Below are positions 1 to 39,178 of a DNA stretch of 41,045 nt, one piece after another. The DNA comes from Macrostomum lignano (Eukaryota). Under the pieces are notes generated by a model. The model was given only the letters and a program-made list of their open reading frames with translations. It was not told the origin of the DNA and searched no databases. Numbering within the stretch: position 1 is the first letter of the stretch; each line of letters starts with the position of its first letter. The stretch spans positions 1 through 41,045 of the forward strand of contig NIVC01004594.1 of the NCBI GenBank assembly GCA_002269645.1. Direction: 5' to 3'. The position numbers were made by a program, and so were the translations under genes.

Positions 1-169
1 TTCAGACTAGTTTTGGTATTGGGGTTTTTGTAATAAAACCATATCTAATGCAGACAAAGCTTTAGAGTTACGAAAAGCCGGTAGCTTTCAACTATAACTT
101 TTATACTTTAAAGTCAATGGCTTTGACTATGTCAGTCACGACGTCACCAGTCGTGACTGACAGTCGTGA

Positions 170-180
170 CGTCACCAGTA
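170..180 (+). repeat. Left target-site duplication of the LINE (CGTCACCAGTA)
   Basis: Identical to 4700-4710; the bases outside the repeat differ. Confidence 0.92.
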
Positions 181-389
181 CCACCGGACTCTACGTCTGG
201 TCTACGACTTTGTCGTAGCTCCTACTTGGCGCCGCGTTTTCGTCGCGGAGGGGAAACACGCCCAATAGGGGTGTACGAAGAGCGCCATAACTCGGACACC
301 GTGTCCAGCGAGCGTCATTGTACTGGAAGATGAGCGCGTATCGGTTTTAACACCGGAGGAGCCAAGTATCCGGCCCGCTACCTCCCGCT

Positions 390-434
390 CTTCTGTTGCT
401 CAGGGCCGGCGATGTTGAGACCAACCCGGGGCCC
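390..434 (+). other. 2A-like ribosomal StopGo peptide LLLLRAGDVETNPG|P
   Basis: Matches the D(V/I)ExNPGP consensus (GAT GTT GAG ACC AAC CCG GGG CCC, 411-434) with the typical upstream Leu run; in frame with ATG 330. Confidence 0.9.
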
Positions 435-866
435 TGCCTGCCCGTCAGCTGCGGCCGCCCTCTGCGCGGCAAGTTCCTCACCTGCGCGAGATGTAACAGC
501 CGCTTCCATCTGCAGAGGGAATGCTCCGGGTTGAGTCGTTGGGCGCGAACAAGGCCGCGGACGCCCAGGAATGGCACTACGCCAATTGCGAGAACGCCCA
601 CCACCCAGACAGACTCGTCGTCCTCTGACAACCGTCCACCCTATCTGCCAGCCCACGGAGGAGCAAACCGCTCGCAGGCAAGCCCTGCTCAACTGTATCC
701 GGCAGGAGAAACCTAAATGCAACCATTGTCGGAAAACGATGCGCGTCAGCTCCACCATCGCCTGCTGCAATGCCTGTGAAGGATTCTTCCATAACGCCTG
801 CTTGCAAGCCACGCGCGACCAGATCAAAAAGAAATCGGTCGTGGGCTTTGGAGATGCGGTCGCTGC
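435..866 (+). other. Two tandem PHD-like zinc fingers at the N-terminus of the LINE ORF
   Basis: Finger 1: CLPVSC..CARC..FH...C, completed after a frameshift by WHYANC (572-589, one Cys to Tyr). Finger 2: CNHC..CNAC..FHNAC (from 718), completed after a frameshift by WRCGRC (849-866). Confidence 0.75.
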
Positions 867-3800
867 ACCGAAGCCGCCTGCCTCCAAGGCCCGCCCTCCC
901 TGAGGACCCTGACCCCACTCCTGTTGGAGGGAGCCACCCGGAAGCTGGGTGGGACTGCAAGAAACCTGAGCTCAAAATTATTCAATGGAATGCGGATGGG
1001 ATCAGCAACAAAATGGGGGAGCTTGAGGACCTCGCATCCCGGCTTCAGGCCGACGTTATTGCGGTTCAAGAGTCGAAGCTCACCTCCTTCAACAAAACCA
1101 TCCGCAAGGACCATAAAACTGCCCGCTGCGACCCGAACGTTAAAGGCGGCGGCCTGCTCTTCTTTTCCGGCAAGGCATTCCGTTCAATAAACTTCAAGGA
1201 TGGTCTGGCGGAACCACCGAAGGCTGCAGAATTTCGATCAGCACCTCGGCCAGAAAAAAACTTGTCGTCTCCAACATCTACCGCCCCCCCCATCCGGCGC
1301 GTGGAAGGCGAAGATCACCGTGAGCACCCCAGTGTCGATTCCTGGCTCAGATGCTTCCACAGGGAAATTCTGCTTGGTGACCTCAACCTCCACCACACTG
1401 CCTGGGGCAGCGATCCCAATCAAGGACCTGAAGGTGCAGCACAAGCTCAGTGCCTGTTCGACTGGTGCAACTCCGTGGACTACCGCATCCTGAACTCAGG
1501 GGAACACACCTGCGTTGACAGGCGCACCGGACGGACTAGTGCTCCCGATCTCACCATCGCTAGTCAATCAGTGGCCGACCTCTGTAAATGGCAACCGCTC
1601 ACCGAGTTTGGCTCCGATCACCAACCCATCCTGGTGACAGTCCGGGAATCCCGGGAAACCCTGAGCACTGCGCCTCGCTTCAGCTGGTCTCGGAAAAAAG
1701 CGGACTGGACCGCTTACCAGACCCTGCTCTCCGAGGACGCCGACCACCTCAATGGCGGCTCCATCAAGAAACAGATTGCCAGGCTCAGCTCGGGCATGCT
1801 TAAAGCAGCCAAAGCTGCTATCCCGCTCAAAAAGTTTCTGCCAAAAACAAGCCATACTGGGATGAAGAATTTACTGAACTTCGCGACACTCGGAACCGGC
1901 TTAGGGAATCTGGCGCCCATCCTGGCGAGTGGCTCGAAAAAAGTCACGAACTGTCCAAACTCTGTGCCGAAAAGAAAGCCGAATTCTGGAAGGAGTACAT
2001 CAACAAAATGTCCGACTCTGCCGACCCAAAACAAGTCTGGAGGACTGTCAAGTGCCTCAGCAACGGCAAACAACAAGATCCTCCCAACGAATCTCTCGTT
2101 GTTGATGGTCGAGACCTGCGCACGGACAAGGAAAAGGCTAACGCCTTTGGCCGCTATTACGAAAACATCAGCACTCTGAAACACTCGGCGGTGGACCGCA
2201 AGGTCAAAGTGGCCACGTCCCGTCGCCTGGCTCATTACTCCACAGACGACGACCTTTACTGCCGTGACTTCACCCTGGTGAGCTGAAACGGGCCATTGGC
2301 AAACTTGACCCCAGCAAAAATGTGGTCCGCGCCGAAATCGAAGCTGCCTTCTTCATCTACCTGCCGGACTCTTGGATGACGGCCTGGCTGGCCGTCTTCA
2401 ACCGTTGCTGGCACACCGGACACTGTCCTGGAGTCAGGCTGTCCGAGTCTGGAAAAAGGCCGTTATCGTCCCCCTGCTAAAGGACGGAAAGGACCCCAAA
2501 GACCGCGGTAGCTACAGGCCTGTCAGCCTCACCTCCATCTGCGGGAAGATCCTCGAACGGCTAGCTTATCCTTGATCGCCTCTATCGCTGGCTCGAGCTC
2601 CACAACATCATTCAGCCTGGCAAGCCGGTTTTCAACGTAGTCGTGGCTGTGAAGAGCAAATCGCACGCCTCGTTCAGTCAATTCAAGATGGATGGGAGAA
2701 ACGCCCGCACTTGAAAACTGTGGCCATCCTCATTGACTGCTCTCGCGCCTTCGACCGTGTTTGGCGCGCTTGCCTTATTGGTCGCATGATGGACGAAGGC
2801 GTCCCTGCCTGTATGGTGCGCTGGTTCACCAGCTTCCTCGAAGGCAGGCAGATCGCTGTGCGGGTCGGCTCCTCGCTTGGGAAATGGCGCAGACTGAGGG
2901 AAGGCGTCCCCAGGGCGCCGTCAGCTCGCCTGCCCTCTTCCTCATCTATGTTAACAAGTGGTCCGGTCACAACGTGCCTCTCGTCGACTACAGTGGCTAT
3001 GCAGATGATCTCGCCCTCTGGAGCACGGGCCGGAACCTCCCGGAAATCCAGGCTCGCCTCCAATCCGCCCTGCAGCTCGTCGAGGAATGGGCCGCTCATC
3101 TACGCATCGACATCAACCTTTCTAAAACTGAGGGATGCCTCTTCTCTCGGGACAGATCCGACCGTCAACGCAACCTCAGCCTCACCCTCCGGGGCCAACA
3201 GATTCCTTTCAAGCAGGAGATTAAGTTTCTCGGAATCTGGATTTACCAAGGTCTGCTATTCGAAAAGCAAACTGACTCCGTCCGGGAGAAAATGCTTCGC
3301 CGAGCTGCCATCCTTCGTGCCCTAGCCCACCGTGAATGGGGCTGGGATCGCAAGCTGCTGCTGCGAGTCTACTGGGCTCTTGTCGAATCCGTCGTGTGGC
3401 ATGCCGCCGCGGCCTGGACGCCCTGGCTATCTGCGACCCGTCTCAACGCCATCGACCGTGCCTAGCGTGAGGCCCTCCGGGTTGTCACTGATCTCCCCCG
3501 CTCGACACCGGTAGAGGCCATCTACTTTGAGTCGGGAATCCTTCCTATCAGCCTCGAAGCCCGCAGAAGATCGCTGCTTGCGGTTGAGAAGGCGCTCCGC
3601 AGACCTCCCGGCGACCCCTTCCGGCAGCTTTGCGAACGCCGCCAGGACACCCGGCTTTCTGCCAACCGAGGCCTCCGCGAAAAAGCTAGACGCATCACCG
3701 ATGAGCTCCTTGGTGGACACCGTCTAGCCAACAGCCACATCCGGCTCCCACCCTGGAATTCGTTGGCCGACGCCGGAGTGCGCATGTTCAACAAGCTGCT

Positions 3801-4699
3801 GTTCGAGCCCATTGAAACCGACGCCGCCCAGGCGGGTCCAAGCCACCGCGACCGCGCGCTGCCCGAACGCCGCCACTTACTTCACCGACGGATCCGTCTC
3901 TGGTGGCGTTGAAAACGGAGGTGCAGCCTGGATTCTCCTGAGCCAGGACGGCTCCATCAGCCGGCGCGGGCGCGTGGCCGCGGGCCGCTGGTGCAGCCCT
4001 CGGCCTTCCTTTGAGGCCGAACTTATCGCCATCTTCCAGGCTCTAAGCGATATCATTGCCAATGCCCGAAAGAGGCTGCAATTCTCACCGACAGCCAGAG
4101 CGCTATCGCGGTCCTGCAAGCTGATCGCCCAACCATCAACCCGCTCGTCGAGAACGTTAAGGAACGCCTTATCATCGCCGCCCGTCTTTCTAAGATCATC
4201 CTGCAGTGGGTGCCCGGGTACGCCGGAATCCCCGGAAATGAACTGGTGGATGCCGAGGCCAAACTAGCGGCCACGCTGCCTCAGGAGCATGTCGGCACCA
4301 CCCTGGATTCGGCTAGGGCCCGCATCCGACGGGTTGTTAACTATTCGCCCAACATGACAGGCCACCTGCTCGAGGTCTATGGCCAAAAGATTACGACGCA
4401 TGAGGGCCCTCGCAGGCAACACAGGTCCTAGTCTCGCAGGTCCGCGCCGGCCACTGTCCTGCATCGATCTACTACCGCGACCGCACCGGCATTGAGGTCG
4501 GGGCCGGCAACTGCCGTCTCTGCGCGGAAGAGGTAGATCAATTCAAACTTCTCAACTGCCCGGCCCTGGACGTCCAACGCCGTACTCACGGCATTACCGA
4601 AATGTGTCAACTCGCTCGCGCCGACGTGGTGGCGCTTCTCCTAGGGGCCATCGGTTGGTGTCCCCTTTAGGAGAGGCTCACAGCATACAACAACAATAG

Positions 4700-4710
4700 C
4701 GTCACCAGTA
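4700..4710 (+). repeat. Right target-site duplication of the LINE (CGTCACCAGTA)
   Basis: Follows the (CAA)n-like tail; identical to 170-180. Confidence 0.92.
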
Positions 4711-4844
4711 ATGCAAAAACCAACTATATTGAGATCATTGTCTAGCAATTTGACGATCATTATTCACATTTTTAATGTAGAACAATCCATTACTACAAGC
4801 AATACATTGTCTGCAGGATCGTCAAATAGAAAAACAATGCAAAG

Positions 4845-5209
4845 AATCAGCGGTCGCAGCACGTGACAACGATTTGTCTATGGCTCGCGCCTACCGCTCG
4901 CCAGACAATCGTTGTCACGCACTGGGACCGCTGATTATTTATTTTGTTGTCTAGCGGGCAAAAGCAAGAGGTGTCTCGTTTATTGACCGAGACGAAGCCG
5001 AGGTCAATGATCGAGACACCGAGTGCTTTTGGCCCTAGACAGCTAAATGAGTGGGGAATATGATATGTATCCCCCGTTCGTTGTCTATGGTTGTTGTCTC
5101 GAATTTATCAGCCCGCGGGGCAGCGGGAAATAAATGATTTATTCACCTAGGGAAATAAATGAAAACATGCGTCACATAGACACTCGCCCGGGGCAAAAGG
5201 GGGATACAT
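4845..5209. repeat. Three consecutive long imperfect hairpins (palindromic non-autonomous element)
   Basis: IR1 4845-4936 (AATCAGCGGTC..GACCGCTGATT, inner GTGACAACGATT/AATCGTTGTCAC). IR2 4949-5040 (GTCTAG..AAAAGCA..GTGTCTCG..ATTGACC / GGTCAAT..CGAGACAC..TGCTTTT..CTAGAC). IR3 5065-5209 (ATGTATCCCCC/GGGGGATACAT). Confidence 0.8.
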
Positions 5210-6166
5210 GGGGAATATATACCATTTATCCATTGTCTAAGGATTCAAGTGAAAAAACGAATCCGAATAAGTATGTTATTCCTCGCTTTTTTCATTTATT
5301 GTGGCCGCGAATAGCTGAAAAACATGGATCAATAAAACCATTGATTGCTTGTCTGTCTTCAATTTTAGCCACCCCCCAGAAGCCTCAGTTCGCATTGATT
5401 TAATTGGCTACTAAATATTCCTTAGTCGTTTGTCTATGGCAAAAGCTGCAGCTAATATAGAACATACAAGACTCGAAGACAGTTGCACGATGTCCTAACG
5501 ACTTTTGCAATCTAGCTATTTCTTGTTGCATTTAATGTTTTGTACAGAGCCTGGATAGGCGACTAAGACACGACTAAAATCACCATTCATGGCTGAATGG
5601 GTTGCTATTGCTATTCAGCCTTTGTATTGGGCTCAAACCATGCATTGTTATTCAGGTAAAAAGAAAAGTTCAAACCTACAAGCTTCTCCACGGTGGTCTG
5701 TATTTATGAGTTAGCAGAAGCTAAAGAAGTCACTACGACTGCCTCTAGCTACGGGTAGTGAAAGGAATTTATCGAAACCAAAATGGTATATTGTAAGGAT
5801 TTTAGCCTTAGCCTTACACTAGCAAGCGCTTCGTTGGCAAAGAAATATGATTGTTTCAGTTTTTGCTCATCCATTTTGGTGGCCTCACTAAACCATGACT
5901 AAGAGATGGTTGTACAATATTTGGAAAAGCCAGCAAATAAAAAGCTTTAACAAAAAACGTACTACTCATCTAAATAATAACACATTGATCGTGAATTAAA
6001 AATTGTATAGTAGCTACGCTCGTACATAGTAAAAATTGTCGGTTTTGTTTCTAGTTACCAGAATTAGCACAAAGAACATGATCAAGCTAACAGAGAACAG
6101 TTTCAATTAAACATAGAAAATTAAGATTTGAATTTAATAATGCTTGGAAACAGACAAGCTTACTGT

Positions 6167-8295
6167 CTATTCTGAGTCGATGCAAACTAACGATTTAAGC
6201 AGCGTTCCCTCGGGTAGTCGAGCGCGGCCGTTAAGAAAAGAGAGTTCAACCACGACCAAGCAGCCAGTGACATTGCCACCAACCCGCTGGATAAGGCGAA
6301 CAGCAGCAGCCATGGTGCCGCCTAGAGCTACTAGGTCGTCAACCAGCATGACTTGGGCACCGGGTGGAACTGCATTGGCCTGGATTTCGAAGCGATCCTG
6401 CCCGTACTCCTTGGTATAGCTCTCAGATTCAACTCGACCGGGTAGTTTTCCAGCCTTACGGATCGGTGCGAAGCCGACACCAAGGCGCTGGGCAATGCAG
6501 GGTCCAAACAAAAAGCCGCGCGACTCTAGACCAACGACAAGATCCACCTGAGGCAAGCCCTGCAACTCAGGAAGCAGTATGGGAATCAATTATCAACAAG
6601 ATAAAAATGAGCAGTTTCTAGATCTTTCAATTATTTGGAAAACCTGCACTCGATTTTGATCGCTCTGTGATAAGTGGCACCACATGCTACAAACAAATAC
6701 TGAGGACTTCTGGAATAACCCTCATAGTCTGAAGATCGAAATCAAATGAAGCCAATATTGTGTAATCACATGCTTCTAATCTTTTTTGTCAATTTTGTAC
6801 ATCCTTTACGTGATTCGATGGCTCATTTTATGCGCGAAAGCTGATTTGCATCAAAATTACTTGGCAGCCAAGCAATTCTTTAAACGTTCCACAGCACGAG
6901 CGTATAAGCTGACAGTGACTGTTATATTAATGAAAGTCTTCTGCATGCTGCCCATACGTACGCCTAGTCAGTCTTAGATCAAGCAATTTTTAGAGCTACT
7001 TTAATCAGCGTCATAGGAGCGTAAGAATTACAATGATAGTGGAAAATATCGAGGAAAAATAGAAGTAAGCATGTACCTTGGCAATATCGACCATAGAATC
7101 GATTGTATCAGCAAAGATAGACGGCGATGCCAGAATTCCCATAATATCTCTACAAATTTGTTTGAAGGTAATAAAAAATTGGCAATTCCTGGATACAATC
7201 TATTACTTGCTTATAATCCATAGAAATAAAGACTTTCCGTGACAATATTTGCGTTCTCCGGGATTTTATTTGGTAATATTCAATAATATCCCGTAAAGTC
7301 TTTATGTCAATGGTTTATGTATCAGATTAAACATGCCTTTTGAGGGCGCTTTTTGTATAAATCACGAGGGCCTGAGGCTTCAACTATATAAACCAGGTAT
7401 AATCCATAGAAATAAAGACTTTCCGTGACAATATTTGCGTTCCCCGGGATTTTATTTGGTAATATTCAATAAAATCCCGTCAAGTCTTTATGTCTATGGT
7501 TTATACGAGATTAAACATGCCTTTTTCGGGAGTTATTTGTATAAATCACGAGGGCCTGAGGCCCGAGGGATTTATGAAAATAACTCCCTCAAAAGGCATG
7601 TTTAATCTGATACATAAAACATAGACAATATTTTACGGGATATTATTGAATGTTGCCAAATGAAATCCCGGAGAACGCAAATAATGCCCGGAAAATCTTA
7701 TTATGAAATCAGGTTTATTCACTTGCAGTAGTTGCGGTTCGTCATGGTAAGATTGTGCAAGGGTTGCTCGTTGTAAGAAGAAAAGAAAAGAAAGGAATTT
7801 TAAACACAGACTAGCTAATTGTAAAAGCCAACGCATTTTGTTGTCACACGTCACGCGTTTCGACATCTTTACGGCTCATTTATCACAAACACAACCAGAT
7901 ATATTAAATACAGTAGAATTATTAATTATCAAAAACACAAGCTCTAAGGTCAGTTCAACCTAGTCCAGTTTAAACAAAATCAATAGTCAAATTAGTCATG
8001 TTCACAAAGAACGACAACGGAAGATACACTCAAGGACTTCTCACAACTGAGTTGATGCTCAGCTCCACTGCTTGGAAGTTAAACGAACCCTGAAGATGTC
8101 TCGTGGTAAGACAACCAGCATATCAGAATTATTCGCCACAAGAAGACGCAATGATACCAGCGCGATCGACGATCGAAAAATAAAGGGATTTAGTATCAAG
8201 ACTCACTTGAAGACAATGCCAGGTTTTGGAAAGTCCGGATAGTCTACTAAGGCCGACTTGATCCGTTGCAATCGAGCCTCTTGTTCAGCAGACAT
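6167..8295 (-). CDS. APRT: Adenine phosphoribosyltransferase, 3 coding exons (8295-8207, 7149-7077, 6559-6167), about 184 aa
   Basis: Spliced product MSAEQEARLQRIKSALVDYPDFPKPGIVFK-DIMGILASPSIFADTIDSMVDIAK-GLPQVDLVVGLESRGFLFG...IRKAGKLPG...EYG...VDDLVALGGT. GT-AG introns with consistent phases (2, 0). PRPP-binding and DFPKPGI motifs present. Confidence 0.96.
7213..7718. repeat. Direct + direct + inverted repeat (about 186-bp unit) in APRT intron
   Basis: 7213-7378 is repeated at 7399-7562. An inverted copy at about 7563-7718 makes a palindrome of about 330 bp (7388-7718) centred on GAGGGCCTGAGGCCCGAGGG. Confidence 0.88.
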
Positions 8296-9217
8296 TTTAA
8301 AGGCCAGAAAGTGCTGGAAAATTCAGAATATTACCAAGCATTTAGTAATGTAAAGGATGTTTTAACTATACTTTCTTTTCTTTCTTGAATAAGGAAACAA
8401 ATTCTCAACTAAGAGACCACTATGATGCGTACCCAAAAATAATGCAAATTCAAGACTAGAATAGCACTGTGGAAACTTGAGTTTCGGTTTTTGAATACAG
8501 CTTCAAGGTTTCGAAGTTAAAACAATTCTCGACCAGGTATAATAGACAAATTCTATTATAAGCAATACAACCTAATGTGCTAGATGCAAAAAGTTAAGTA
8601 GTTTATCGAAAAGTGTGCTCAAAATCCTGTTTTTCTACCTGTAGCGAAACATGCAGGATGGGAATTTCTCAAGATTAGAGGTAGAAGGGTTTGCGCACTC
8701 TGGCGCTCTTAGAAGCGCTGGGCCGGATGAATAAAGTGAGCAAAAACTCAGGAGTAAGAGCTCGGGCTCAGCGCATTGTCACACATTGAGGCATTACTGC
8801 TTTTTCTGCCGACTCGCCCGAGCAGGCACACAAGCGCACGGATACGTAGTCATACGTACAGGCACACACACACAGGAGTGCACAGCGAGCAACTTTATTA
8901 TCTTTGGGGAGGTACTGTAGCAGTCACTGTACCTTGGGATTGGCCTTCAAGGGCGTTAATTGCACGAGCAGAGCCAATCAAGATTCCAATTTAGCCCCAA
9001 ATTAATGTGACCACTGTAAATCGAGCCTGGGCCGCTGGTAGATAAAAGCGCCGAGCTATACAACTAAGCTACGCCCCCCCCCGCGGGATGGGAAATGCAA
9101 TTAATGTAATAGAAATAGCCAGTACTTACACTGTGCTTGTGAAAAAATCTGCCAAATTAACCTCTAAAATGAGTGGGAAAGTGAATGACAGTTACGAGTT
9201 ATGAGCTATACGCTTGT

Positions 9218-9242
9218 ATTGGGCGGCGAAGTAAGCTATTGG
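9218..9242 (-). promoter_or_regulatory. Putative APRT promoter: two CCAAT boxes and a GC box
   Basis: ATTGG at 9218-9222 and 9238-9242, GGGCGG at 9221-9226. These lie upstream of a minus-strand GTAAGT donor (9129-9124) that can splice to the TTTTCCAG acceptor at 8315-8314, 18 nt before the APRT ATG. Confidence 0.55.
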
Positions 9243-9491
9243 CCGAAATGAGCTTGCAGGCAAAGCGGCTACAATGACCGGCCAGGCTCCAACAAACGGA
9301 ATATTTCTACGCCCGGCCGTTTTTCGCTACCTTTATTTTGAAAATTAAGGCGCACACATTGCTAACTTTTTATAGACGTGCATACAAGTTTTTTGATACG
9401 TTTGCGCCAAAACCAATTCTATGCAATACAGACAAAGGCAAATAAGTAGCTACATAAAGCAACATCTGTCGAAGAAAAGTAATGCATTAGG

Positions 9492-9497
9492 TTTATT
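9492..9497 (-). terminator. Candidate AATAAA poly(A) signal for the PAN2-like transcript
   Basis: TTTATT on the + strand about 650 nt past the stop and upstream of the APRT promoter; a second copy is at 9332-9337. Confidence 0.35.
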
Positions 9498-10142
9498 TTA
9501 ACTACAACAGAAAATGGAACAAAATTTTGAAAAATAAGGTGAGAACGGATCGACAGGAACATTTTGTCATTTTGCTCATTTTTGGAGCACCTTCGAAGCA
9601 ATAATGACAGGTACAGGAGAAACGGGTGCAGTCAAACAAGCTTGGGAGACAGCAAAGCGGTTCACTAACAAGACTTCATGGGCTGAGTTGCCATAGACGA
9701 TATCCACCCATATGCTACCGGGTCGTAGTACGGTATATATTGACAGCAATAACGTGCATTAACGCAACATCGAATAACGTTTTCTCTTAGCCTTCCTGTG
9801 GTACAATAAATGAGACGAGGCCATCCCAAGATGCACTCGAGATGCCAAGTTATTTTGAAATCAGTAAGACTAGATTGAAAAACTGGCTTTTGCTATTGCC
9901 ACAGCGCAGTGTTTCGTTTGAATGTTACAAGCCTTTGGTCTGCACAAAAAGAATAAGACACCAAGCAAGATGTGACATTCGCGTGATTCAAGAGTGGCAT
10001 TAGAGATTGGTAGGAAACCAGACTATATGACTACACATTCCTGTCTTCAAAAAACTGGGATACTTTCGAAGTTTAAAATCATCTAAGATAGCAGGAGCTA
10101 AAGTTTTAATTGACAATTTAGTTTAATATCAAACTCGGAATA

Positions 10143-13096
10143 TCAATTTTTTCCAACATCAGCTTCCAATGTGGAGACCTTCTCCGCAATACTTGCAGAA
10201 CCTGAGGTGATGTCACAGGCATTGTTCAGCGACTGGCATTTAGCTGCTGACTGCTCGACCAATTCAGAAAGCTCTGTCAGACTGTAGTAAGGAAAGTGGG
10301 TCCTGCCCCAGCCAGCGGGCTTGCGGGCTATGGCAAGGCCACGGGTTGTAGAAGCGCCACTAATAATTGCCTCATCAATGAGCTTCACCCGTCTCTCGTA
10401 TGAACGGCAGAGGCGAGGCGCCCAATCGCTGGTAAGGGCGCACCGATACCCAGATCCGGCGGAGCTGGCATCGGACTCTTTCGGGTATCCAAATGGCATG
10501 CTGTGAAATTAAGAAAATACAGCCAACATTAGGAAAAATTATGTAAACAGAAATCTTTTCGTCAGGAACTATACTGCTTTAATTTACGAATTGGTGCTTT
10601 GGCTGCTGCAAGCATCTTTGGCTTGCTGCAAAAACTATACCAGATACCAATGGTGAAAAGTGCAAGCACTCGCCACAGGATGCAGTAATAACACGAAGTA
10701 CAATATAAAAAGCTGCGGACCGCTTTTATCGTCTAGCAAATACTTATATATTTACAAAAAAGATTTTGTGAGCAAAGATTCTCTTGTTTATGTAAAAAAT
10801 ATCGCACTAATGCCTATTCATTGTTTATTATCGCAAGCTTCAACAATAGAAAATAGTTGGAACCCCTGCTTTTAATTAATCGATGGCGACTAAATTTCAG
10901 CGTTTCAGCATTTATATTGATGAAAGCCTTTTCTCTCTTACCAGCAATTTATTGCTGCAAATCTAGCCTAATCAATAGTGTGAGCACCCTGTTAATAAAA
11001 AAGGACAGGAAAATTTTATTCGTAGTTTTTTATTACAAAAGAATGCTATTATCTGTTATGCCGAATCATAGTAACTGAGATGTAAATTTATCAGTTATAC
11101 TAGCGTACTAGCATTACAAATTTTGATACAGTATCAAGAAGGCTTATTGTGAGCAAATAGAAAAAATATCCGTTTAAACATTGCTATATACTGACCTTGT
11201 GAAGAAAAAAGACTCGTTGCCAAGTGCAATAGGATTAGGAGAATAAACCGGATCGTCTGGAAATACAGTCGGCAACGGAGAGACATTAAAACGCGGTCCG
11301 ATGACGTCAGCAGTGTCGGCACTCAGCAGGTAGACACCCCCGGCCCCGTCGCCGACAGCGATGCACCGTGAGCTAGCACTAATATCTATATCAGTAGCAC
11401 CAACTCCCAGTTGGTAGACAGGCGATGATGGCATAGACTGACCCAGTTGAAGGAACTGGAATTCGCCAAGCGAATTGCCAACTAACAGTCGGTCATGCAT
11501 TGCCGGTAGGAAGCGGACAAAGTGTGGATCCAGTTGGACGCAGAACGGCTGAACTGGGCGCAAAACTCGCAGATCAAAGGCCTAGAGCAAAAAGTAATCA
11601 ACTAGCCTTAAAAATGACAAGGATATGTGAACACTTGTATCGGCTCTTATTTTAGGACTACAGTGCACTTTACCTGCAGAAGGCGATCAGGTATAACATT
11701 TCCATCATGCCGTACTGACCAGCCGCAAGTGACCAGCAGGCTATCCTGCACTGCTACATCAGCAAGCTGCCCGGTAACTGTGCTGAGGCTGTGCTCTTTT
11801 CGTCCCGTTCCTCTATCCAGTAGAGTAACTGTGCCCTTGGCACTCGCAGCGCAGATAAATCGACCATTGTGCCTTAGAAATTCGCAACCATCTGGTCCCA
11901 TGTCGACACACTTAACCAAGCGGCCAGTGCCAGTATCCAACTGCAACACACGATCCTGCCGGCCACCTAAGGTCAGCCGCCCGGCCTCTGGGTCGTGAAT
12001 CATGGCTGCTAAATCAACGGTCATTCCAGGACATGAATATGACCAACGACGCTGTCCAAACTTTGAGTAACAGGCGACTCCTGATCTGCAGGATGTCAAT
12101 ATATATAGAATATTCGATAGAATTCCCAAGCTCTCTGCCCTCTGAATTTTTCTAGTCAGAAATTTCATTCGTCATACTCTACCCTTAGCGTGTTTTCCAC
12201 TGCTCCCACTCACTACACCGATACAAAGTACAAAAACTGCAATAGTAGCTTATGACTTCTTGTCTACCGTGAGTTATCCGTTAGTCCTAACAGTGACTTA
12301 ATATACGAGTAATTCTTATAACTGCAAGTCCTTTATCTTAGGGTTTTATGAGACGCAAAGAATGTACTATGCAACAAAAAATTGCCTGAGCTCGTTAAGC
12401 TTGAGCACGAACGTATCAGTAGTCGCTAGTGTATAATAAGCAAAAACATATTCTAACTAATAATTTAAAGATGCTTAGTGACCATACCATAGTGACAACT
12501 TAATGACATCTGGTTATATGAAAAACGGCACTTCAAGTTAAGTTTAATATTTTTGACATTACTTAAGATAGTTACCAACTATTTGGTAGCTGATTTGCTC
12601 CTTAAGTTCCTTAAATCAAGCACGTTTTAAACTAGACGTGCAAACTTACTGACTACATTATACCGCAATTTATCAGATGACATATACTTCAAAAGAGTTC
12701 TCACTTTGCCATTGTGAAGACGCCAGCCTCAGCAAGAGGACTAGCAGCACACACCTGTCGCAAATCTTTCTGGACGTGAAGCGACACATACTTGCTGAGC
12801 TGCGGTCCATAGTAACCTGTAAGATGGCCGCCGCAGTTAACACACCACAGCAAGTCCTCGTACTTGTCGAAATGAACGCCGGTTACTGCCTGATTAGTCC
12901 CATCCATGACAACCCAGTTGTACATAAAGTACTCTCCGATTGCAGGCACATTACCTAGCTGGCCTGTCGACTGGGATGGCGAGTGCTGTCCAGAAAAGAA
13001 CTGTGGCGCTGCATCCATTGGACCACTAACAGCTGAGATGCCAGCTCCAGTGGACGTACCAGGTGCAAAAAACTGTTGAGACTGTTGATGATACAT
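10143..13096 (-). CDS. PAN2: PAN2-like protein (PAN2-PAN3 deadenylase subunit), WD40 + linker only; exons 13096-12705, 12085-11674, 11581-11196, 10500-10143; 515 aa
   Basis: Exons join in frame with GT-AG sites (phases 2, 0, 2; 1548 nt). Motifs match the PAN2 N-terminus as recalled: HFDKYEDLLW..GGHLTGYYGPQL, DRLLQAFDLR, DPHFVRFLP, DISASSRCIAVGD, LTSDW, RTHFPY. TGA at 10145-10143. Confidence 0.88.
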
Positions 13097-13440
13097 TGAC
13101 AAGCTGAAAGGTGCAGAGACAAGCTAAAGAAAAGCAAACATCAATACACAGGAAGTATTGCTTAATGGATAGGAAGTATATTCCAAACTATAATCAAAAG
13201 TAGCTACTCGTTGCATAAGTAAGAAGCTTCTTAGCAACTTTTTGCATATGCAATATGCAATATGTACTTCTATATCGATCATAGCATATGCACTGGGTTG
13301 TAAATAAAGCTGTATATTATAATTTGCAATTCGTATACAAATATAAAATGTCAATGCTTTTGCCTATCAATGTTTCTTATAGTAGGAAAGCAATTGATTT
13401 TGCTTTAGTTATGGTACATACATGTGCAACCTTGGGAATC

Positions 13441-13560
13441 ACTTGGCCATTTCTATTGGCAACACACATAAGTCACTATTGTCTACAAGCAGTCACGTGA
13501 CTACTATTCCATCCAATAATGACTTACATGTGTTGTTTATTGCCAATAGAAATGGCCAGT
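13441..13560. repeat. 120-bp imperfect palindrome upstream of PAN2
   Basis: GGCCATTTCTATTGGCAA (13445-13462) pairs with TTGCCAATAGAAATGGCC (13540-13557). Inner TAAGTCA/TGACTTA pair. Centre AGTCACGTGACT. Confidence 0.8.
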
Positions 13561-14349
13561 GAATTCCTAGGTTGCACCCAAGCATGTTGTGGTAGTTGCA
13601 AGCTTATTCTTATTAAATTTGCAAGTTTGCTTTGTTTCAATTCTAGAAGTATTTATTTTTATTCAGGCAAAACTATGAAAATATCTGCTTTCTTTCAGAT
13701 CATTTTGTACTCTTCATTGTTTACTCTCTTATGCAATTCAATCTAGCCTTTTCTTTTTCACCCTCTTCTTCACTTTGATTGGTCCTTACTTTGTCCCTCT
13801 TTAGCCTCTTATTCTCACTCTACCCCTCCATTTTTTTGTGTAGCTAACCTAACCCCCTTTATGCATTTCTTAACCTGCCTAACCTAAATTTTGGCCCCTA
13901 CCCCTATGGTCTGGCAATTTATCTGGCTGCAATTCTGGTTTTCACCTAGGGTCTAAAATATTTCTGACATTTACAAATATATTATAAGTCTAAAGGTGGT
14001 AAACATTTCCAAGATGTTCATTATTAGAAAAAAAATAAAAATAGATGTTCTATAAGGTATATTTAAATGTATATAATATAGTATATAAAATATATCCAAT
14101 GCAGTGCAAAAATGCTTTCCATTCATTCCAATTGAAATGTAATGCAAAAATGATATATTTATAACACCCACTATAATGCATTGACTACATGTGCGAATAG
14201 TCTATTACTAGCAGACAAGCAATGAAAATTGATTGGCCCTAAAGTCTATATGTATCAAATAGTCAATCTAGTAAATTGGGGATAAAATATTTTATGTTAG
14301 GGACCTCTGTTGTCATTTTTAATAGATGATCTACTATTATATATAACAT

Positions 14350-15370
14350 ACAAGCTGTTGAAACCCGTGGAATTTGAACCTGGGGAATTCCAAATTTTTG
14401 CATGTATTCTGTCATTTTGAAATCTGAGCCCATGCTCAAACAAAAACTGGTTAATAGTTAGTAGGATAGAGGTAAACAAAATGGAGTACATTCGCATAAA
14501 ATAAGGATTTGAGGCAAACATTGATATTGTTGGCTAGGGTGTTTTTTACTTTAAATAGGCAATTAATGTCTGTCTGACTCTAAAACATGTATTGGCAAAC
14601 TCTGGCCTCTGCCTCTGACTCTCCCTACATCCCTTGGATCCTTTGAAACTTCTATCTTCTCTTCTGTTTCATACATGCGCAACAGTTGGCCGAGTTGGCC
14701 AATCTGGCCAACCGATTTGGCGGCCAACCAAGGAAGTCGCAAAAATGCCCACCCAAAAAATAACCCAAGTAGTAGTACTAAGTAGCTGACGAGGCATTTA
14801 TAAAAATAAAACAGTCATAGTTACTCCTGCCGTTTACCCAAAGTTGCGTTAATTTTGCTTTCGGGTTTTGTTATATGTAAGTCGCATTTTTGGCCAAAAA
14901 CTACGTCGCTTTTTTGTTAAAACTAAGTCGCACGGCTGACCGAATTTTGGAGGTTGCACATGTATGTTCTGTTTCCTGTCTTCTTTCTCATCCCTCGTCT
15001 CTCCTCTCTGCTCTCTCTCCTCTCTTCTCTTTTTCCTCTCTCCTCTCGTATCTTCCCTCATTTCTCTTCCTTTTCATCTCTTTTATCTCATCTCTTTTCT
15101 CTTCTTTTCTCTTTTCTCTCCTCTTACTCTTCTCTCATCTTTTCCTTCACCTCTCTTCTCTCTTGTCTTTATTTGCTCTCTGATCTCTTCTCTCTCTTCT
15201 CTCTTATCTCTCCTTTGTTCTCTCTACTTTCCCATCTCTCATCTGTTCATTTTCATCTCTGCTCTCAGCTTATCCCCCTCTTTCATCTGTCATCTTTACT
15301 GTCTTATATGTTCTCTCATTCTGTCCTCTGTACTCTTTTCTTTCACCTCTTTTGTCTCCTCACTTTCCTT
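14350..15370 (+). repeat. Composite CT-cored repeat, copy 1 (unique head + polypyrimidine core)
   Basis: Head ACAAGCTGTTGAAACCCG...AAAACATGTATTGGCAAACTCTGGCCTC...GGATCCTTT aligns with 38473-38772. Core segments 15181-15370 align with 39280-39437. Confidence 0.8.
14670..14966 (+). mobile_element. hAT-type MITE, 297 bp
   Basis: 14-bp TIRs CATACATGCGCAAC / GTTGCACATGTATG (1 mismatch). 8-bp TSD TTCTGTTT (14662-14669, 14967-14974). Second, inverted copy at about 31215-31525. Confidence 0.85.
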
Positions 15371-21169: not shown

Positions 21170-22140
21170 GTGCCCTCTTTTCTCTCATCTCTACACTCTT
21201 GTCTCTTATCTCTGCTCTCTTGTCTCTAATCTTTTCTCTCTCATCTCTGCCCTCTCCTCTCTCATCTCTTGCTTTCTCCTCTCCTCACCTCTCTCCTCTC
21301 CTCTCTCCTCATCTCTATCCTCTCTTCTCTCCTCACCTCTGCTCTCATCTCCCTTTTCCTCTTCATTCTCTTCTCCCTTCCCACCTTTCTCCTCTCCATT
21401 AATCTCCCTTATCCTCTGATCTCTCTCTGCTCATATTTAATCTCTCCTCTCATCAACTCTCTTCTCCTTTATTCCTTCGCCTCTCCTTTATCCTATGCTT
21501 GTATTTCTCTTCTCTATTCCTTACCCTCTCTCCTCACCTCTGGCCTGCTGTCATCAGGACTCCTCGCTTCGCTTTGGGGGCCAACGAAGCAGACTATAGA
21601 AGGGCAGTCATGAGCTGGGTTCTCAATCGAGGTAAAAAGTTTGCCAACCCCTGCACTAAAAGCACCTGGCTTAGTCACATTAGATAAAAACTACATGTAT
21701 AGTGGAATGGGATTGAGAACAATGTGAACTAGCCTCTCTACTCTCAACCTCTCTACTCTCAGCCTCTATCTACTCTCAACCTCTCTATTCTCAGCCTCTC
21801 CACTCTCAGCCTCTCTCTACTCTCAGCCTCTACTTTCATCTTCTCTCTCAGCTCAGCTTATATCTAGTTCTAAAATCTGAAGTCATACTCAAACAAAAAC
21901 TTGTCTTTTGAAAACATGTATTGGCAAAATCTCTGGCCTCTTGTCTCTCTCTATGTCCCTCGGATCCTTTGAAACTTCTATCTTCTATTTTGTTTTCTCT
22001 CTCTCTCTTCTCTCTTTCTTCTCTTCTCTTCTTTCCTATCTCCTCTCTCCCATCTTCTCTCGTCGATCTTCCCTCACCTCTCTTCTCTTTCATCTTTGCT
22101 CTCTCTTCTCATTTATCTCTGGTCTCCACTCTCTCCCCTT
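21170..22140 (+). repeat. Composite CT-cored repeat modules inside the MULE
   Basis: CT tracts at 21170-21540 and 21990-22140, a ~15-bp CTCTCTACTCTCA(G/A)C minisatellite at 21733-21832, and a partial head at 21868-21984 that aligns with 14415-14448 and 14582-14657. Confidence 0.7.
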
Positions 22141-22839: not shown

Positions 22840-23360
22840 AAATTCTCTATTCTCTCTCCTCTATCATCTCGACCCTCTTTCCTATTATTTTTTTCTTGTC
22901 TTATCTCCTCTCTCTCATCTCTTATCTATACTCTCCTTTAACATCTCTCCTCTTTTTTCCCAACTCTCCCAACTCTTCTCTCAACTTTCTCCTCTTTACT
23001 CTTTCACCTCCCCTCTCTACTCTCTCCTCCCTCTCATCTCTCCTGCTCTCCCATCTCTCTTCTCCTTTCTACTCTCTCCCTTCTCCATTCTATTTCTTCT
23101 CATCTCTCTTCTCTCCCTTCTCCTCTCTTCCTGTCCTCTTGATTCTCCTTTATTCTCCTTTCTCCTTCACTCCACTTCTCTCCCATTGTCTCTCATGTCT
23201 GCTCTCACATATTTCTCTTCTCTCTCCACTCGTCTCTATAATCTCTTCCCTCTCCTCTCTCCTCTGTTCTAGCTCTACTGTCTCATTTCTCAACTCTGCT
23301 CTCTCATCTCTTCTTTCTCCTCTTTTATCTCTCCTATCTGATCTCTTTTCTCTTCTGTTT
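22840..23360 (+). repeat. CT-rich polypyrimidine tract
   Basis: About 500 bp, almost all C/T on the + strand. Confidence 0.85.
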
Positions 23361-24420
23361 GTATCAGACTTGTATCTGTACATGTATTTAGAGGTTCAGC
23401 TTATTTTGACAATATTTCAGAATTGTTAGACTTTGGTTGAAGCCTTGCATTTTTTGGGTATGTACTTGCTGAAAAATACATGCATCTCATATCTGTGCAA
23501 ATTTGCCGCAGTGCATAAAGAGTACAAATGATATTTACATAAATAAATCTGAGGCTTCATGCTAAGTGCTGCATGCAAAGTCATTATATTGAGTTATTTA
23601 TTTACAAGCCAGATTGTTATCATGGTTACCAACCATAGCAGTTGGTTAAAAATGTTAAAACTGAAAAAAGATTGCAACGAAAAATAATGATATGGCTGAT
23701 TTGATGTGAGCTGTTTTATATAGATAGATTTTTATCTCCATGCAAGCCACGCAAGCCAGTCAGTTATTTAGACTGTATTTATGACTTCCAATCGTATTGT
23801 ATCAGTATAGGCCAAGATTGAAAAAAAAGTTGCTCTATAGGGTTGGCTTGAGTGTAATGATCCGTGAGGCATCACTACCACTAGGGGAGCACTGTGAGGA
23901 CTGTTTGACCATAAATTAACTCTTTGCTCATTCAAGCTTGAATTGACAGCAACCCCACCTACCTTTTGGAATATGGCTCGTATGTGAACTCAATAGAAGT
24001 AGAAATCAAAAATAAAAAAACTGCATCAGTTGCCACCCATTCACGATATTTCATATTATTTCTAGATACCAACGAATTGACAACAGCTTGTAGCTTGTAG
24101 CAATGAATAAATTGTTTTTCTATGAAATCTTTCATCAGGCCTGTTCTGCGAATGTGGGTGCAAAAGGTATCTCATATTTGCATTTTAATAGCTTGTATAT
24201 GTAGCTCATATAATATCATGCATAATGATGGGGATGATGAGATGCTGATGAATTACGGAGGCAGAAATGCACTGAGTCACACATACATGCAGTGACTAGC
24301 CCAAGTAAAGGCTGCTTCCTTTGTAAGTGCGACGCAATGAACCCCCCCCCCATCCCAAATTTGAGCGTAAAACAAAGTGTAATATCTGGCAAGAAATGTG
24401 CAAATGGGCAGAAACTAAGA

Positions 24421-24832
24421 AAGTGCGGATTTTTTGGTTTTTTTAACTCGTTATGATCTGAAATGGCAATAAGGTACGGGTGGCATGGATAGATGACAAA
24501 GTTCAAGCAAATTATAGCAATGGGTACAGTATATTAAGTAAGTGCGGATTTTTTTGGCTTTTTTAACTCGTTATGATCTGAAATGGCAATATGGTACGGG
24601 TGGCATGGATAGATGACAAAGTTCAAGCAAATTATAGCAATGGGTGCAGTATATTAAGTAAGTGCGGATTTTTTTGGCTTTTTTAACTCGTTATGATCTG
24701 AAATGGCAATAAGGTATGGGTGGCATGGATAGATGACAAAGTTCAAGCAAATTATAGCAATGGGTGCAGTATATTAAGTAAGTGCGGATTTTTTTGGCTT
24801 TTTTAACTCGTTATGATCTGAAATGGCAATAG
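24421..24832. repeat. 120-bp tandem repeat, about 3.4 near-identical copies
   Basis: Unit AGTGCGGATTTTTTTGGCTTTTTTAACTCGTTATGATCTGAAATGGCAAT...ATATTAAGTA starts at 24422, 24541, 24661 and 24781. Confidence 0.95.
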
Positions 24833-31525: not shown

Positions 31526-32389
31526 ATATATAACAATTAAGATAAGATTTGAAAAAAGTAGAAGATCCCTATTGGAAAAATTGACATTTTCATAGATAGC
31601 CACTAGTGTCCTTCAAAAAGTGTTAGCACGCTTGCTGCGCTAGAATGGCTAAAGGGCTAAAAGGACAGTGCACCAATTCACAAAGATGATAAGAACCCCC
31701 CCCCCCTACTAAGGGCAATACAAGCAAGTGTCTAATAAAGACAGAGGCTATCTTCTTGATGCACACAAGAAAAATATTATGATTATGTCTCTCTAGTGCA
31801 ACTCATTAAATATCAAGAGAGCCACTGTCTATTCTATCTTGCAATTAGGGTAATAGGAAAAGCAAGCCATAGAACAAAATATATAAAGTTTGATATGCAG
31901 ATAATTTTACAATGCACTAAACATTATTCCAAAAAAATAATTGAAATTAAAATTGAATGCAGATCAAAGTTAGTTGTAGTTTATCCTGCTCAATGGTAGA
32001 TAGGTACTTGTAAATAGTAGGCCCTAGTATTATTATATTTGTTATAGTACATAATTATAGCATATATTATTGTATGAATGATATTAATAAATACCATTTA
32101 TCAAGATATACAAGTAATTGATATTGTCAATAGCATAGCCATAGGGGGCCTGGAAAGTCTCAAACCTCCTGAAATCATGCTGAAAATGTTTACTAAGTAT
32201 TTAATCTTTGGTTTAAATTTTAAGCCAAAGTAATGGAGATTTCAAATTTTACCTTTTTTTCTAAAGCATTACATTACTTTATCTAGATCTGCATGATAAT
32301 AAGAATCCAAACCATACCAAGTCACTCTTTTGCCCATAAACAAAGCAAACATTGACTTTATTTTTTTCCATTCTAGCAGCTTTTTAGTC

Positions 32390-39104: not shown

Positions 39105-39178
<74 letters not shown>

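What the first reader, a model, noticed from the sequence alone, without database searches (positions are those of the whole stretch)
10143..13096. PAN2 gene that stops after the WD40 + PAN3-binding linker: no nuclease half
Seen: four exons splice cleanly into a 515-aa ORF ending TGA at 10143, followed by AT-rich sequence, a candidate poly(A) signal at 9492 and the APRT promoter about 900 bp after the stop. No exon-sized ORF encoding the UCH/USP or DEDD exonuclease domain was found in 1-10140. Known: canonical PAN2 is about 1100-1200 aa (WD40-linker-UCH-DEDD), and the WD40 and linker contact PAN3. Inference: this is gene fission (catalytic half encoded elsewhere), a nuclease-less paralog that could bind or titrate PAN3, or a long intron nesting APRT and the LINE with the remaining exons left of the window.
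Basis: partly seen in the sequence, partly recalled or inferred. Interest (0 to 1): 0.8.

Follow-up and report, generated by a model that had tools for sequence, protein, structure and literature searches.

The report
Flatworm PAN2 gene lacking its nuclease half
This Macrostomum lignano gene is a real, complete PAN2 that encodes only the propeller and the PAN3-binding linker; tapeworms and a fluke have the same short form, so flatworms seem to have detached or lost the enzyme half of a conserved poly(A)-shortening complex.

Summary
The window is a whole 41,045-bp contig of Macrostomum lignano (assembly GCA_002269645.1). The four exons (13096-12705, 12085-11674, 11581-11196, 10500-10143, minus strand) splice into the 515-aa ORF. 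That ORF equals the RNA-seq-guided GenBank model PAA47056.1.

The product is a PAN2 WD40 propeller plus the PAN3-interacting linker, and nothing else. No UCH or DEDD exonuclease coding sequence exists anywhere in the window or in two near-identical sister loci.

The same short architecture occurs in Echinococcus, Taenia, Rodentolepis, Calicophoron and one unidentified transcript. All stop 0-47 aa after a shared derived motif, KPxxWGxxxxPY. In E. granulosus a convergent gene starts 250 bp after the stop.

The truncation is therefore old and conserved. It is not an assembly break, a giant intron or a pseudogene.

One question stays open. I could not test whether a separate UCH-exonuclease gene exists elsewhere in flatworm genomes (fission) or has been lost. 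I lean slightly to loss. I found no paper describing this. It is a new variant of a known kind, and interest is moderately high.

The parts
12705..13096 (-). Exon 1 of PAN2N: ATG at 13096-13094, a disordered N-terminus and the first propeller blades. A pyrimidine-rich acceptor (ctttcag) ends at 13104, and the annotated ORF starts at 13102.
   Evidence: The 5' end at a likely spliced-leader acceptor is inferred from the 'LSM' start of PAA47056.1 and.
11674..12085 (-). Exon 2: WD40 propeller blades.
   Evidence: tblastn, 33-40% identity to PAN2 residues about 122-287.
11196..11581 (-). Exon 3: last propeller blades and the start of the PAN3-interacting linker (linker from about 11305).
   Evidence: propeller residues about 55-360, pLDDT above 90.
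10143..10500 (-). Exon 4: the rest of the PAN3-interacting linker (SDW motif, the PVD-like segment), the flatworm motif, a 47-aa tail predicted with low confidence, and the TGA stop at 10145-10143.
10287..10322 (-). Codons for KPAGWGRTHFPY (residues 457-468). This is the flatworm version of the canonical 'NPxxxRRNQVPY' that precedes the UCH domain, and the last position alignable to any PAN2.
10105..10127 (-). Two ATTAAA hexamers, 16 and 33 nt after the stop. They are candidate poly(A) signals and are conserved in all three loci.
   Evidence: Their use is not shown.
9492..9497 (-). AATAAA, an alternative distal poly(A) signal. It lies upstream of the CCAAT boxes of the next gene.
6167..9250 (-). 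Downstream boundary: the APRT gene on the same strand. It has CCAAT boxes at about 9243 and 9222, a possible non-coding first exon with a GTAAGT donor at about 9131, an acceptor ttttccag at about 8316, the ATG at about 8295, and a last-exon ORF at 6589-6167 (Pribosyltran).

Best explanation
This is the complete flatworm form of PAN2, which I call PAN2N. It is a stand-alone protein made of the seven-bladed WD40 propeller and the PAN3-interacting linker, ending at a genuine stop codon just where canonical PAN2 enters its UCH-like domain.

Shown: the ORF, its splice sites and its stop; its identity with an RNA-seq-guided gene model; the absence of UCH or DEDD coding sequence in the locus; and the same truncated architecture with a shared derived C-terminal motif in cestodes, a trematode and an unidentified transcript.

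Inferred from fungal and human structural work: PAN2N wraps its linker around the asymmetric PAN3 homodimer. It docks its propeller on the PAN3 knob and on PABP-PABP interfaces of long poly(A) RNPs. It cannot remove adenosines itself.

My committed reading is that the nuclease module is no longer part of the flatworm PAN2-PAN3 assembly and has most likely been lost. PAN2N-PAN3 would then persist as a non-catalytic poly(A)-RNP and GW182 adaptor, with deadenylation left to CCR4-NOT or other nucleases. I put loss at about 50% and a separately encoded nuclease at about 35%. That the gene is real and complete I hold at about 0.9.
For: - Exon model and stop.
- Identical to the GenBank models of two loci, built from RNA-seq, spliced-leader reads and poly(A)-site data.
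- PAN2_N only in Pfam. Human PAN2 9qtu_C matches at 1e-37.
- The flatworm profile matches human PAN2 at 1e-51, aligning residues 80-387 and, in a second stretch that is not significant on its own (2.5 bits) but is collinear and carries the SDW motif, 404-461.
- The AF2 propeller has pLDDT above 90, and the four best PDB fold matches are PAN2 WD40 structures (7.6e-30 to 6.4e-24, against 6e-16 or weaker for generic WD40).
- No UCH or exonuclease by tblastn in the window, in L001 or in L002.
- Short orthologues: E. granulosus, E. multilocularis and T. crassiceps (582 aa), C. daubneyi (629 aa), R. nana (418 aa), and Logan transcript L006 (440 aa, TGA directly after ...WGPVWYPY). All carry KPxxWGxxxxPY 0-47 aa from the end.
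- The last exons in E. granulosus and C. daubneyi run straight into TAG and TGA.
- In E. granulosus a convergent AP-mu gene starts 250 bp after the stop.
- The longer cluster members are upstream ELP4 fusions, not UCH or exonuclease.
- The linker is as conserved as the propeller between M. lignano and the other flatworms (29-34% against 27-32%).
- The cestode tail is conserved between Echinococcus and Taenia.
- ctPan2 1-458 (WD40 plus linker) binds Pan3, while UCH-Exo 459-1170 alone does not, and isolated Pan2 cannot bind RNA: PMC4158885. This makes an untethered nuclease a poor deadenylase and favours its loss.
Against: - The presence or absence of a PAN2-type UCH-exonuclease gene elsewhere in M. 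lignano or any flatworm was not tested. The one search that could have shown it listed only the best 120 of 626 hits, all from other phyla.
- PAN3 was not looked for.
- PAN3 binding is inferred from homology only.
- The five short proteins form a clade in an NJ tree with only 45% bootstrap support, and long-branch attraction is possible.
- A non-catalytic role for a conserved PAN2N has no precedent.
- The cryo-EM contact between the UCH-like domain and the PAN3 knob (PMC6547884) shows that a nuclease supplied in trans could in principle still dock.
Confidence: 0.5

Rival explanations
1. Gene fission. The ancestral flatworm PAN2 was split at the flexible segment between the PAN3-interacting linker and the UCH-like domain. 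A separate, unlinked gene still encodes the UCH-like and DEDD module. That module joins PAN2N-PAN3 non-covalently, so the complex is still a deadenylase.
For: - The break lies exactly at a domain boundary, so both halves could fold.
- PAN2N is conserved, as expected if the complex still works.
- Flatworms use spliced-leader trans-splicing. The M. lignano leader ends in ATG, and 15% of its genes are in operons, which makes splitting a gene into two cistrons easy (PMC8629364).
- The UCH-like domain contacts the PAN3 knob in the yeast cryo-EM structure (PMC6547884).
Against: - No UCH or exonuclease sequence lies next to PAN2N in M. lignano, E. granulosus or C. daubneyi.
- In Chaetomium the UCH-Exo fragment alone does not pull down Pan3 (PMC4158885).
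- No flatworm protein appeared among the 120 listed PAN2 C-terminal homologues, but that list was truncated.
Confidence: 0.35
2. An old nuclease-less paralogue. Flatworms also keep a canonical full-length PAN2 elsewhere, and PAN2N is an extra copy that competes for or modulates PAN3.
For: Only 20 of the 150 listed representatives were given names, so a divergent full-length flatworm PAN2 could be hidden among the unnamed ones.
Against: - The exhaustive HMMER search gave no second M. lignano-like protein. The next hit is a mollusc at 36% identity.
- None of the named flatworm clusters carrying PAN2_N holds a member with UCH or RNase_T.
- The flatworm proteins sit as one clade within PAN2 in the NJ tree.
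Confidence: 0.07
3. An incomplete gene model. The remaining UCH and exonuclease exons lie beyond a very long intron that nests APRT and the LINE, off the left end of the contig, or the assembly is broken there.
For: The window ends 10.1 kb downstream of the stop. The sister loci add almost nothing beyond that.
Against: - The same junction appears in three independently assembled contigs.
- The transcript-based annotation ends at this stop.
- Orthologues in four other flatworm genera and one transcript contig stop at the homologous position, with in-frame stops in the genome and a convergent neighbour 250 bp away in E. granulosus.
- The candidate donors inside exon 4 look weak by eye.
Confidence: 0.04
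4. A decaying remnant: a pseudogene left after PAN2 was disrupted in M. lignano.
For: One of the three copies (L002) has a 1-bp deletion in a G5 run in exon 3 that shifts the frame.
Against: - Two copies keep an intact 515-codon ORF across four exons.
- The homopolymer indel is typical of a PacBio error.
- The architecture and the linker motifs are conserved between Macrostomorpha and Neodermata.
- The H. microstoma model that contains PAN2N, which is fused to the upstream ELP4 gene, is expressed, with normalised counts of about 1200-1900 (PMC6225667 supplement).
Confidence: 0.03

Closest known systems
Canonical PAN2, the catalytic subunit of the PAN2-PAN3 deadenylase (for example human PAN2, PDB 9qtu chain C; yeast Pan2, 6r5k)
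   Same: It has an orthologous WD40 propeller (Pfam PAN2_N 2e-36; Foldseek 7.6e-30 to 9qtu_C). It also has a collinear PAN3-interacting linker with the SDW motif and the terminal PY motif.
   Different: It lacks the UCH-like pseudo-protease and the DEDD RNase_T exonuclease, about 700 residues in all. It ends about 47 aa after the position equivalent to human residue 461. The segment 'YAPNPxxxRRNQVPY' is replaced by 'RKPxxWGxxxxPY'.
Laboratory truncations: Chaetomium Pan2 WD40-PID 1-458 (Wolf et al. 2014, PMC4158885) and the PAN2 WD40-CS1 constructs in PDB 4czy and 4d0k
   Same: The domain content is almost the same as the natural flatworm protein. The 1-458 fragment is sufficient to bind the PAN3 pseudokinase/C-terminal dimer. 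4d0k_A and 4czy_A are among the best fold matches.
   Different: Those are engineered fragments of a full-length enzyme. This is a naturally encoded, evolutionarily conserved gene product.
[quoted passage not shown]
   Same: They have the same WD40 plus linker architecture, the same KPxxWGxxxxPY end motif and a short non-conserved tail.
   Different: They are 27-31% identical to the M. lignano protein. The Neodermata carry a roughly 100-aa insertion in the linker and an upstream ELP4 neighbour, whereas M. lignano has APRT downstream. Their names imply a ribonuclease that the sequences do not contain.
Split PAN2 gene models in other phyla (for example Solemya velum ScPMuIL_015614 with 015619, and short Artemia and Homalodisca models)
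   Same: These are short PAN2_N-only database entries.
   Different: In those species a UCH-exonuclease model lies a few genes away on the same contig, or full-length isoforms sit in the same 90% cluster (P0278 1091 aa, P0276 1208 aa, P0290 1214 aa). They are annotation fragments, not a conserved architecture.

Membership tests
PAN2 (PAN2-PAN3 deadenylase catalytic subunit) | N-terminal seven-bladed WD40 propeller of the PAN2 type (Pfam PF20770) | tested here: met
   PAN2_N 2.1e-36. phmmer to human PAN2 gives 1e-37. The AF2 propeller has pLDDT above 90, and the top four PDB fold hits are all PAN2 WD40.
PAN2 (PAN2-PAN3 deadenylase catalytic subunit) | PAN3-interacting linker (PID / connecting segment) after the propeller | tested here: met
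   The alignment with full-length PAN2 is collinear up to residue 471, corresponding to residue 445 of P0005 and 404-461 of human PAN2. The SDW and PY motifs are conserved. Binding itself was not tested.
PAN2 (PAN2-PAN3 deadenylase catalytic subunit) | UCH-like pseudo-protease domain (PF13423/PF00443) | tested here: not met
   There is no Pfam hit in the protein. tblastn finds nothing in the window, L001 or L002.
PAN2 (PAN2-PAN3 deadenylase catalytic subunit) | C-terminal DEDD (RNase_T, PF00929) exonuclease with catalytic residues | tested here: not met
   There is no Pfam hit. The only weak tblastn matches (E 0.4-4) fall in the LINE on the opposite strand.
PAN2 (PAN2-PAN3 deadenylase catalytic subunit) | Forms a 1:2 complex with a PAN3 homodimer | not testable with these tools
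   Inferred from linker conservation and from PMC4158885. The M. lignano PAN3 was not identified.
Flatworm PAN2N (informal group defined here) | Ends 0-47 aa after the motif KPxxWGxxxxPY, with no further domain | tested here: met
   In M. lignano KPAGWGRTHFPY is followed by 47 aa. The figures are 0 for P0016, 36 for P0021 and 32 for P0051. All have PAN2_N as their only PAN2-related Pfam family, with no UCH or RNase_T; weak generic WD40/beta-propeller hits also appear.
Flatworm PAN2N (informal group defined here) | Single origin (monophyly of the short proteins within PAN2) | tested here: inconclusive
   They form a clade in the NJ tree, but with 45% bootstrap support and long branches. The shared motif and shared truncation point support a single origin.

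The most novel reading that the evidence does not exclude
Rhabditophoran flatworms have no PAN2 nuclease at all. PAN2N-PAN3 survives as a nuclease-free poly(A)-RNP sensor. The new tryptophan-rich C-terminal motif (WGPVWxPY) that replaced the entry into the UCH domain acts as a W-motif. It either occupies the PAN3 W-binding pocket or recruits another effector, such as CCR4-NOT through CNOT9. That would rewire the first step of mRNA deadenylation across this large part of the phylum.
Probability: 0.15. Interest if true: 0.85.

Novelty: new variant of a known kind. Interest (0 to 1): 0.62.

Why it matters
PAN2-PAN3 is treated as a universal eukaryotic deadenylase in which one polypeptide couples a PAN3- and PABP-binding front end to the nuclease. 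A lineage that has kept the front end as its own conserved gene since at least the last common ancestor of Macrostomum and the parasitic flatworms is a natural separation-of-function experiment.

It would show either that the nuclease can work untethered or that WD40-linker/PAN3 has a function independent of deadenylation. M. lignano has transgenesis and RNAi, so this can be tested directly.

There is also a practical point. [quoted passage not shown] They should not be read as deadenylases or as enzyme targets.

Tried and rejected
- **Word-indexed search with the 515-aa protein.** It found only M. lignano itself.
- **Word-indexed search with a mollusc PAN2 C-terminal half.** This was meant to find an M. 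lignano UCH-exonuclease protein. It returned 626 hits but listed only the best 120, all from molluscs, vertebrates and similar groups. It says nothing about flatworms.
- **Word-indexed search with a profile of the flatworm short proteins.** It retrieved only M. lignano and two unrelated WD40 proteins, so the taxonomic survey could not be widened. That used the last of the three searches.
- **Looking up transcripts by exact sequence.** The spliced protein was not accepted, and the exon-4 ORF is not on record.
- **P0179, an 866-aa C-terminal-only UniParc entry.** I considered it as a possible M. lignano C-half. Its sequence looks gastropod-like, and it is not on record in any assembly.
- **dN/dS among the three M. 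lignano loci.** Abandoned, because the loci are 97-99% identical through introns and intergenic DNA alike, which leaves no power.
- **Literature and supplements.** No paper discusses PAN2 in flatworms. Only one expression-table row turned up, for the H. microstoma ELP4-PAN2N fused model.
- **The Schmidtea genome paper.** It is not held.
- **A tRNA-like stretch at about 9040-9090.** ARAGORN does not call it a tRNA.
Full report
**What the window is.** The 515-aa product is 100% identical to GenBank PAA47056.1. That entry is 'hypothetical protein BOX15_Mlig026565g3, partial [Macrostomum lignano]', carried on a contig of exactly 41,045 bp. The window is therefore a whole contig of the Mlig_3_7 assembly (GCA_002269645.1) of this free-living flatworm.

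Two further loci carry the same gene. L001 is on NIVC01003470.1 (96 kb; PAA51285.1, 517 aa, two amino-acid differences). L002 is on NIVC01001148.1 (99 kb; PAA71674.1, annotated as 355 aa). The three loci are 97-99% identical through exons, introns and intergenic DNA alike. They are haplotypes or very recent homeologues of this hidden polyploid, so they give no power for dN/dS.

**Checking the observation.** The four exons (13096-12705, 12085-11674, 11581-11196, 10500-10143, minus strand) have GT-AG introns and join into 1548 nt, which is 515 codons plus TGA.
- The GenBank model is 'partial' only because its ORF is open two codons (L, S) upstream of the Met.
- That start, at 13102, lies one base after a pyrimidine tract and AG (…ctttcag|C).
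- This is what a spliced-leader-trimmed transcript would give. M. lignano trans-splices about 30% of its genes to a 35-nt leader ending in ATG (PMC8629364). That this mRNA is trans-spliced is my inference.
- The Mlig_3_7 annotation was built from RNA-seq, spliced-leader reads and T-fill poly(A) sites (PMC5730564), so the annotated stop rests on transcript evidence.
- All three loci share the TGA and two ATTAAA hexamers 16 and 33 nt downstream. AATAAA follows at 9497.
- The L002 copy has a 1-bp deletion in a G5 run in exon 3, which explains its 355-aa model. It may be a PacBio homopolymer error.

**What the protein is.** Pfam gives PAN2_N (2.1e-36, residues 69-353) and nothing else of note.
- phmmer against PDB sequences gives human PAN2 (9qtu_C) at 1e-37 and the fungal PAN2 WD40 structures.
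- An exhaustive HMMER search of 1.84 billion representatives gives 450 hits. Those I examined (the 20 that were given names, and the Pfam annotation of several unnamed ones) are PAN2 N-termini.
- The best non-self hit is a mollusc PAN2 (P0005, 1228 aa, 36% identity), aligned collinearly from query residue 57 to 471 against residues 47-445.
- An AlphaFold2 model has a propeller (residues about 55-360) with pLDDT above 90. The linker (360-470) is extended and of lower confidence, with a small helix-hairpin. The last roughly 47 residues are modelled at low confidence.
- The four best PDB fold matches are all PAN2 WD40 (7.6e-30 to 6.4e-24). Generic WD40 proteins come next, at 6e-16 or weaker.

**No nuclease half in the locus.** tblastn with seven full-length PAN2 proteins finds only the four exons, on both strands of the whole window and of L001 and L002.
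- The last alignable residue is the PY at 10287.
- The only other matches (E 0.4-4) fall in the LINE on the opposite strand.
- Downstream on the same strand lies APRT. It has CCAAT boxes at about 9243 and 9222, a possible non-coding first exon with a GTAAGT donor at about 9131, an acceptor at about 8316, its ATG at about 8295, and a last exon at 6589-6167.
- Beyond APRT is a degraded LINE on the plus strand (endonuclease and RT ORFs, about 770-4400).

**The decisive comparison.** Among the representative hits, several short proteins end exactly where the M. lignano protein ends.

| Protein | Length | Source | Residues after the motif |
|---|---|---|---|
| M. lignano PAN2N | 515 aa (exon model); GenBank entries P0001/P0003 are 517 aa | this window | 47 |
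| P0016 | 440 aa | unidentified transcript contig L006 | 0 |
| P0021 | 629 aa | Calicophoron daubneyi (trematode) | 36 |
| P0051 | 582 aa | Echinococcus granulosus | 32 |
| P0285 | 582 aa | E. multilocularis | same cluster as P0051 |
| P0286 | 582 aa | Taenia crassiceps | same cluster as P0051 |
| P0053 | 418 aa | Rodentolepis nana | fragment that stops before the motif |

- All except the P0053 fragment carry the motif KPxxWG/MGxxxxPY (M. lignano KPAGWGRTHFPY). Other animals have 'NPxxxRRNQVPY' there, followed by the UCH-like domain.
- P0016 comes from the 1484-nt Logan contig L006. It holds an uninterrupted ORF ending …KPANWGPVWYPY-TGA, followed by 137 nt of non-coding sequence.
- Apart from weak generic WD40/beta-propeller matches, PAN2_N is the only Pfam family hit in these proteins; none has UCH or RNase_T. 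The two longer cluster members (H. microstoma 927 aa, Hydatigera 975 aa) are fusions to the upstream ELP4 (PAXNEB) gene and contain no UCH or exonuclease.
- In E. granulosus the order is ELP4, then PAN2N, then a convergent AP-mu gene whose end lies 250 bp from the PAN2N stop. In C. daubneyi ELP4 is again upstream.
- In both genomes the last exon runs through the motif and tail into an in-frame TAG or TGA. tblastn finds no UCH or exonuclease in the 10 kb downstream.
- The cestode tail is conserved between Echinococcus and Taenia.
- Between M. lignano and the other flatworms the linker is at least as conserved as the propeller (29-34% against 27-32% identity).
- The five short proteins form a clade in an NJ tree. 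Bootstrap support is only 45%, and the branches are long.
- As a control, short PAN2_N models in Artemia, Homalodisca and Tegillarca share 90% clusters with full-length proteins, and in Solemya the UCH-exonuclease model lies a few genes away on the same contig. Those are annotation fragments.

**Interpretation.** The truncation is real and old. It dates at least to the common ancestor of Macrostomorpha and Neodermata, that is, of rhabditophoran flatworms. The ORF is maintained. This disposes of an assembly break, a giant intron and a pseudogene as main explanations.

The product corresponds almost exactly to the Chaetomium 'WD40-PID 1-458' fragment.
- That fragment suffices to bind the PAN3 pseudokinase/C-terminal dimer.
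- UCH-Exo (459-1170) alone does not bind it, and isolated Pan2 cannot bind RNA (PMC4158885).
- In the yeast cryo-EM structure the WD40 domain binds the knob of the bent PAN3 protomer and a Pab1-Pab1 interface, and it is needed to recognise long poly(A) RNPs. The UCH-like domain touches the other PAN3 knob (PMC6547884).

By homology, then, PAN2N should still assemble with PAN3 on poly(A)-PABP. It carries no catalytic activity.

**What remains open.** I could not establish whether flatworms encode the UCH-like/DEDD module as a separate gene (fission) or have lost it.
- The one search that could have shown it listed only the 120 best of 626 hits, none from flatworms.
- A later profile search failed at the word-index stage.
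- No further searches were available, and PAN3 was not examined.

I lean to loss (about 50%) over fission (about 35%). Cutting the only high-affinity tether should cripple the nuclease's access to substrate, PAN2-PAN3 is dispensable in other systems (my own knowledge), and flatworms are known for losing conserved genes (my own knowledge). Fission remains quite plausible in a phylum with spliced-leader trans-splicing and operons.

**Novelty.** Searches of the held literature for PAN2 together with flatworm, Platyhelminthes, Schistosoma, Macrostomum or USP52 found nothing on this. [quoted passage not shown] The only expression evidence found is a differential-expression table row for the H. microstoma ELP4-PAN2N fused model. 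Its GO terms cover only Elongator and protein binding. I class this as a new variant of a known kind, with moderately high interest.

Noticed in passing
window 770-4400 (+); also L001 and L002: A degraded LINE lies here. Its ORFs have endonuclease (Exo_endo_phos_2, 3e-16) and reverse transcriptase (RVT_1, 4e-13) domains in broken frames, and the region is GC-rich (55-62%). It sits at the same position downstream of APRT in all three M. lignano loci.
   Followed up: partly
window 6167-9250 (-): The APRT gene has two CCAAT boxes at about 9243 and 9222, a possible non-coding first exon (GTAAGT donor at about 9131) and an acceptor 18 nt before the ATG at about 8295. That acceptor could equally be a spliced-leader trans-splice site. 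Whether APRT has its own promoter or shares a transcription unit with PAN2N is unknown.
   Followed up: partly
window 24867-26726 (-), with tandem repeat 24416-24831: An intact 619-aa ORF carries a MULE transposase domain (3.8e-12). It is immediately flanked by 3.5 copies of a 120-bp tandem repeat that are 97% identical. This may be a recently active DNA transposon.
   Followed up: no
window 32330-33304 (+): A 324-aa Q/P-rich ORF has an SSXT (SS18 N-terminal) domain (1.6e-25). It looks like an SS18-like transcriptional co-activator gene, apparently encoded in a single exon here.
   Followed up: no
window 13424-13577: A nested inverted repeat (arms of 34 nt and 20 nt, 82-85% complementary) lies about 330 bp upstream of the PAN2N start. 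It looks like a MITE.
   Followed up: no
window 14980-15225, 21175-21860, 23234-23356, 38793-39913: There are long CT/TC-rich low-complexity tracts with strong strand skew (GC skew down to -0.85 at 39-40 kb). They create spurious long Ser/Leu-rich ORFs.
   Followed up: no
L002 about 11760 (equivalent to window exon 3, about 11350): The third M. lignano copy has GGGG where the others have GGGGG. This shifts the frame and explains its 355-aa annotation. It may be a real inactivating mutation in one homeologue or a long-read homopolymer error.
   Followed up: partly
L007 (E. granulosus) 7277-13349; L008 (C. daubneyi) 1-39644: ELP4 (PAXNEB) lies immediately upstream of PAN2N in both a cestode and a trematode. 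The two genes are merged into a single model in H. microstoma (927 aa) and Hydatigera (975 aa, named Elongator protein 4). This may be conserved synteny, or co-transcription, that misleads annotation.
   Followed up: partly
window 13096-13105 (-): If the mRNA is trans-spliced at 13104/13103, the ATG at the end of the M. lignano spliced leader would open a short out-of-frame upstream ORF of about 25 codons that overlaps the PAN2N start codon.
   Followed up: no
window about 9040-9090 (-): A G-run is followed by a tRNA-like stretch (…GCGTAGCTTAGTTGTATAGCTCGGCG…GGCTCGATT…) between the putative APRT promoter and the coding exon. ARAGORN does not call it a tRNA. It may be a fragment of a tRNA-derived SINE.
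   Followed up: partly
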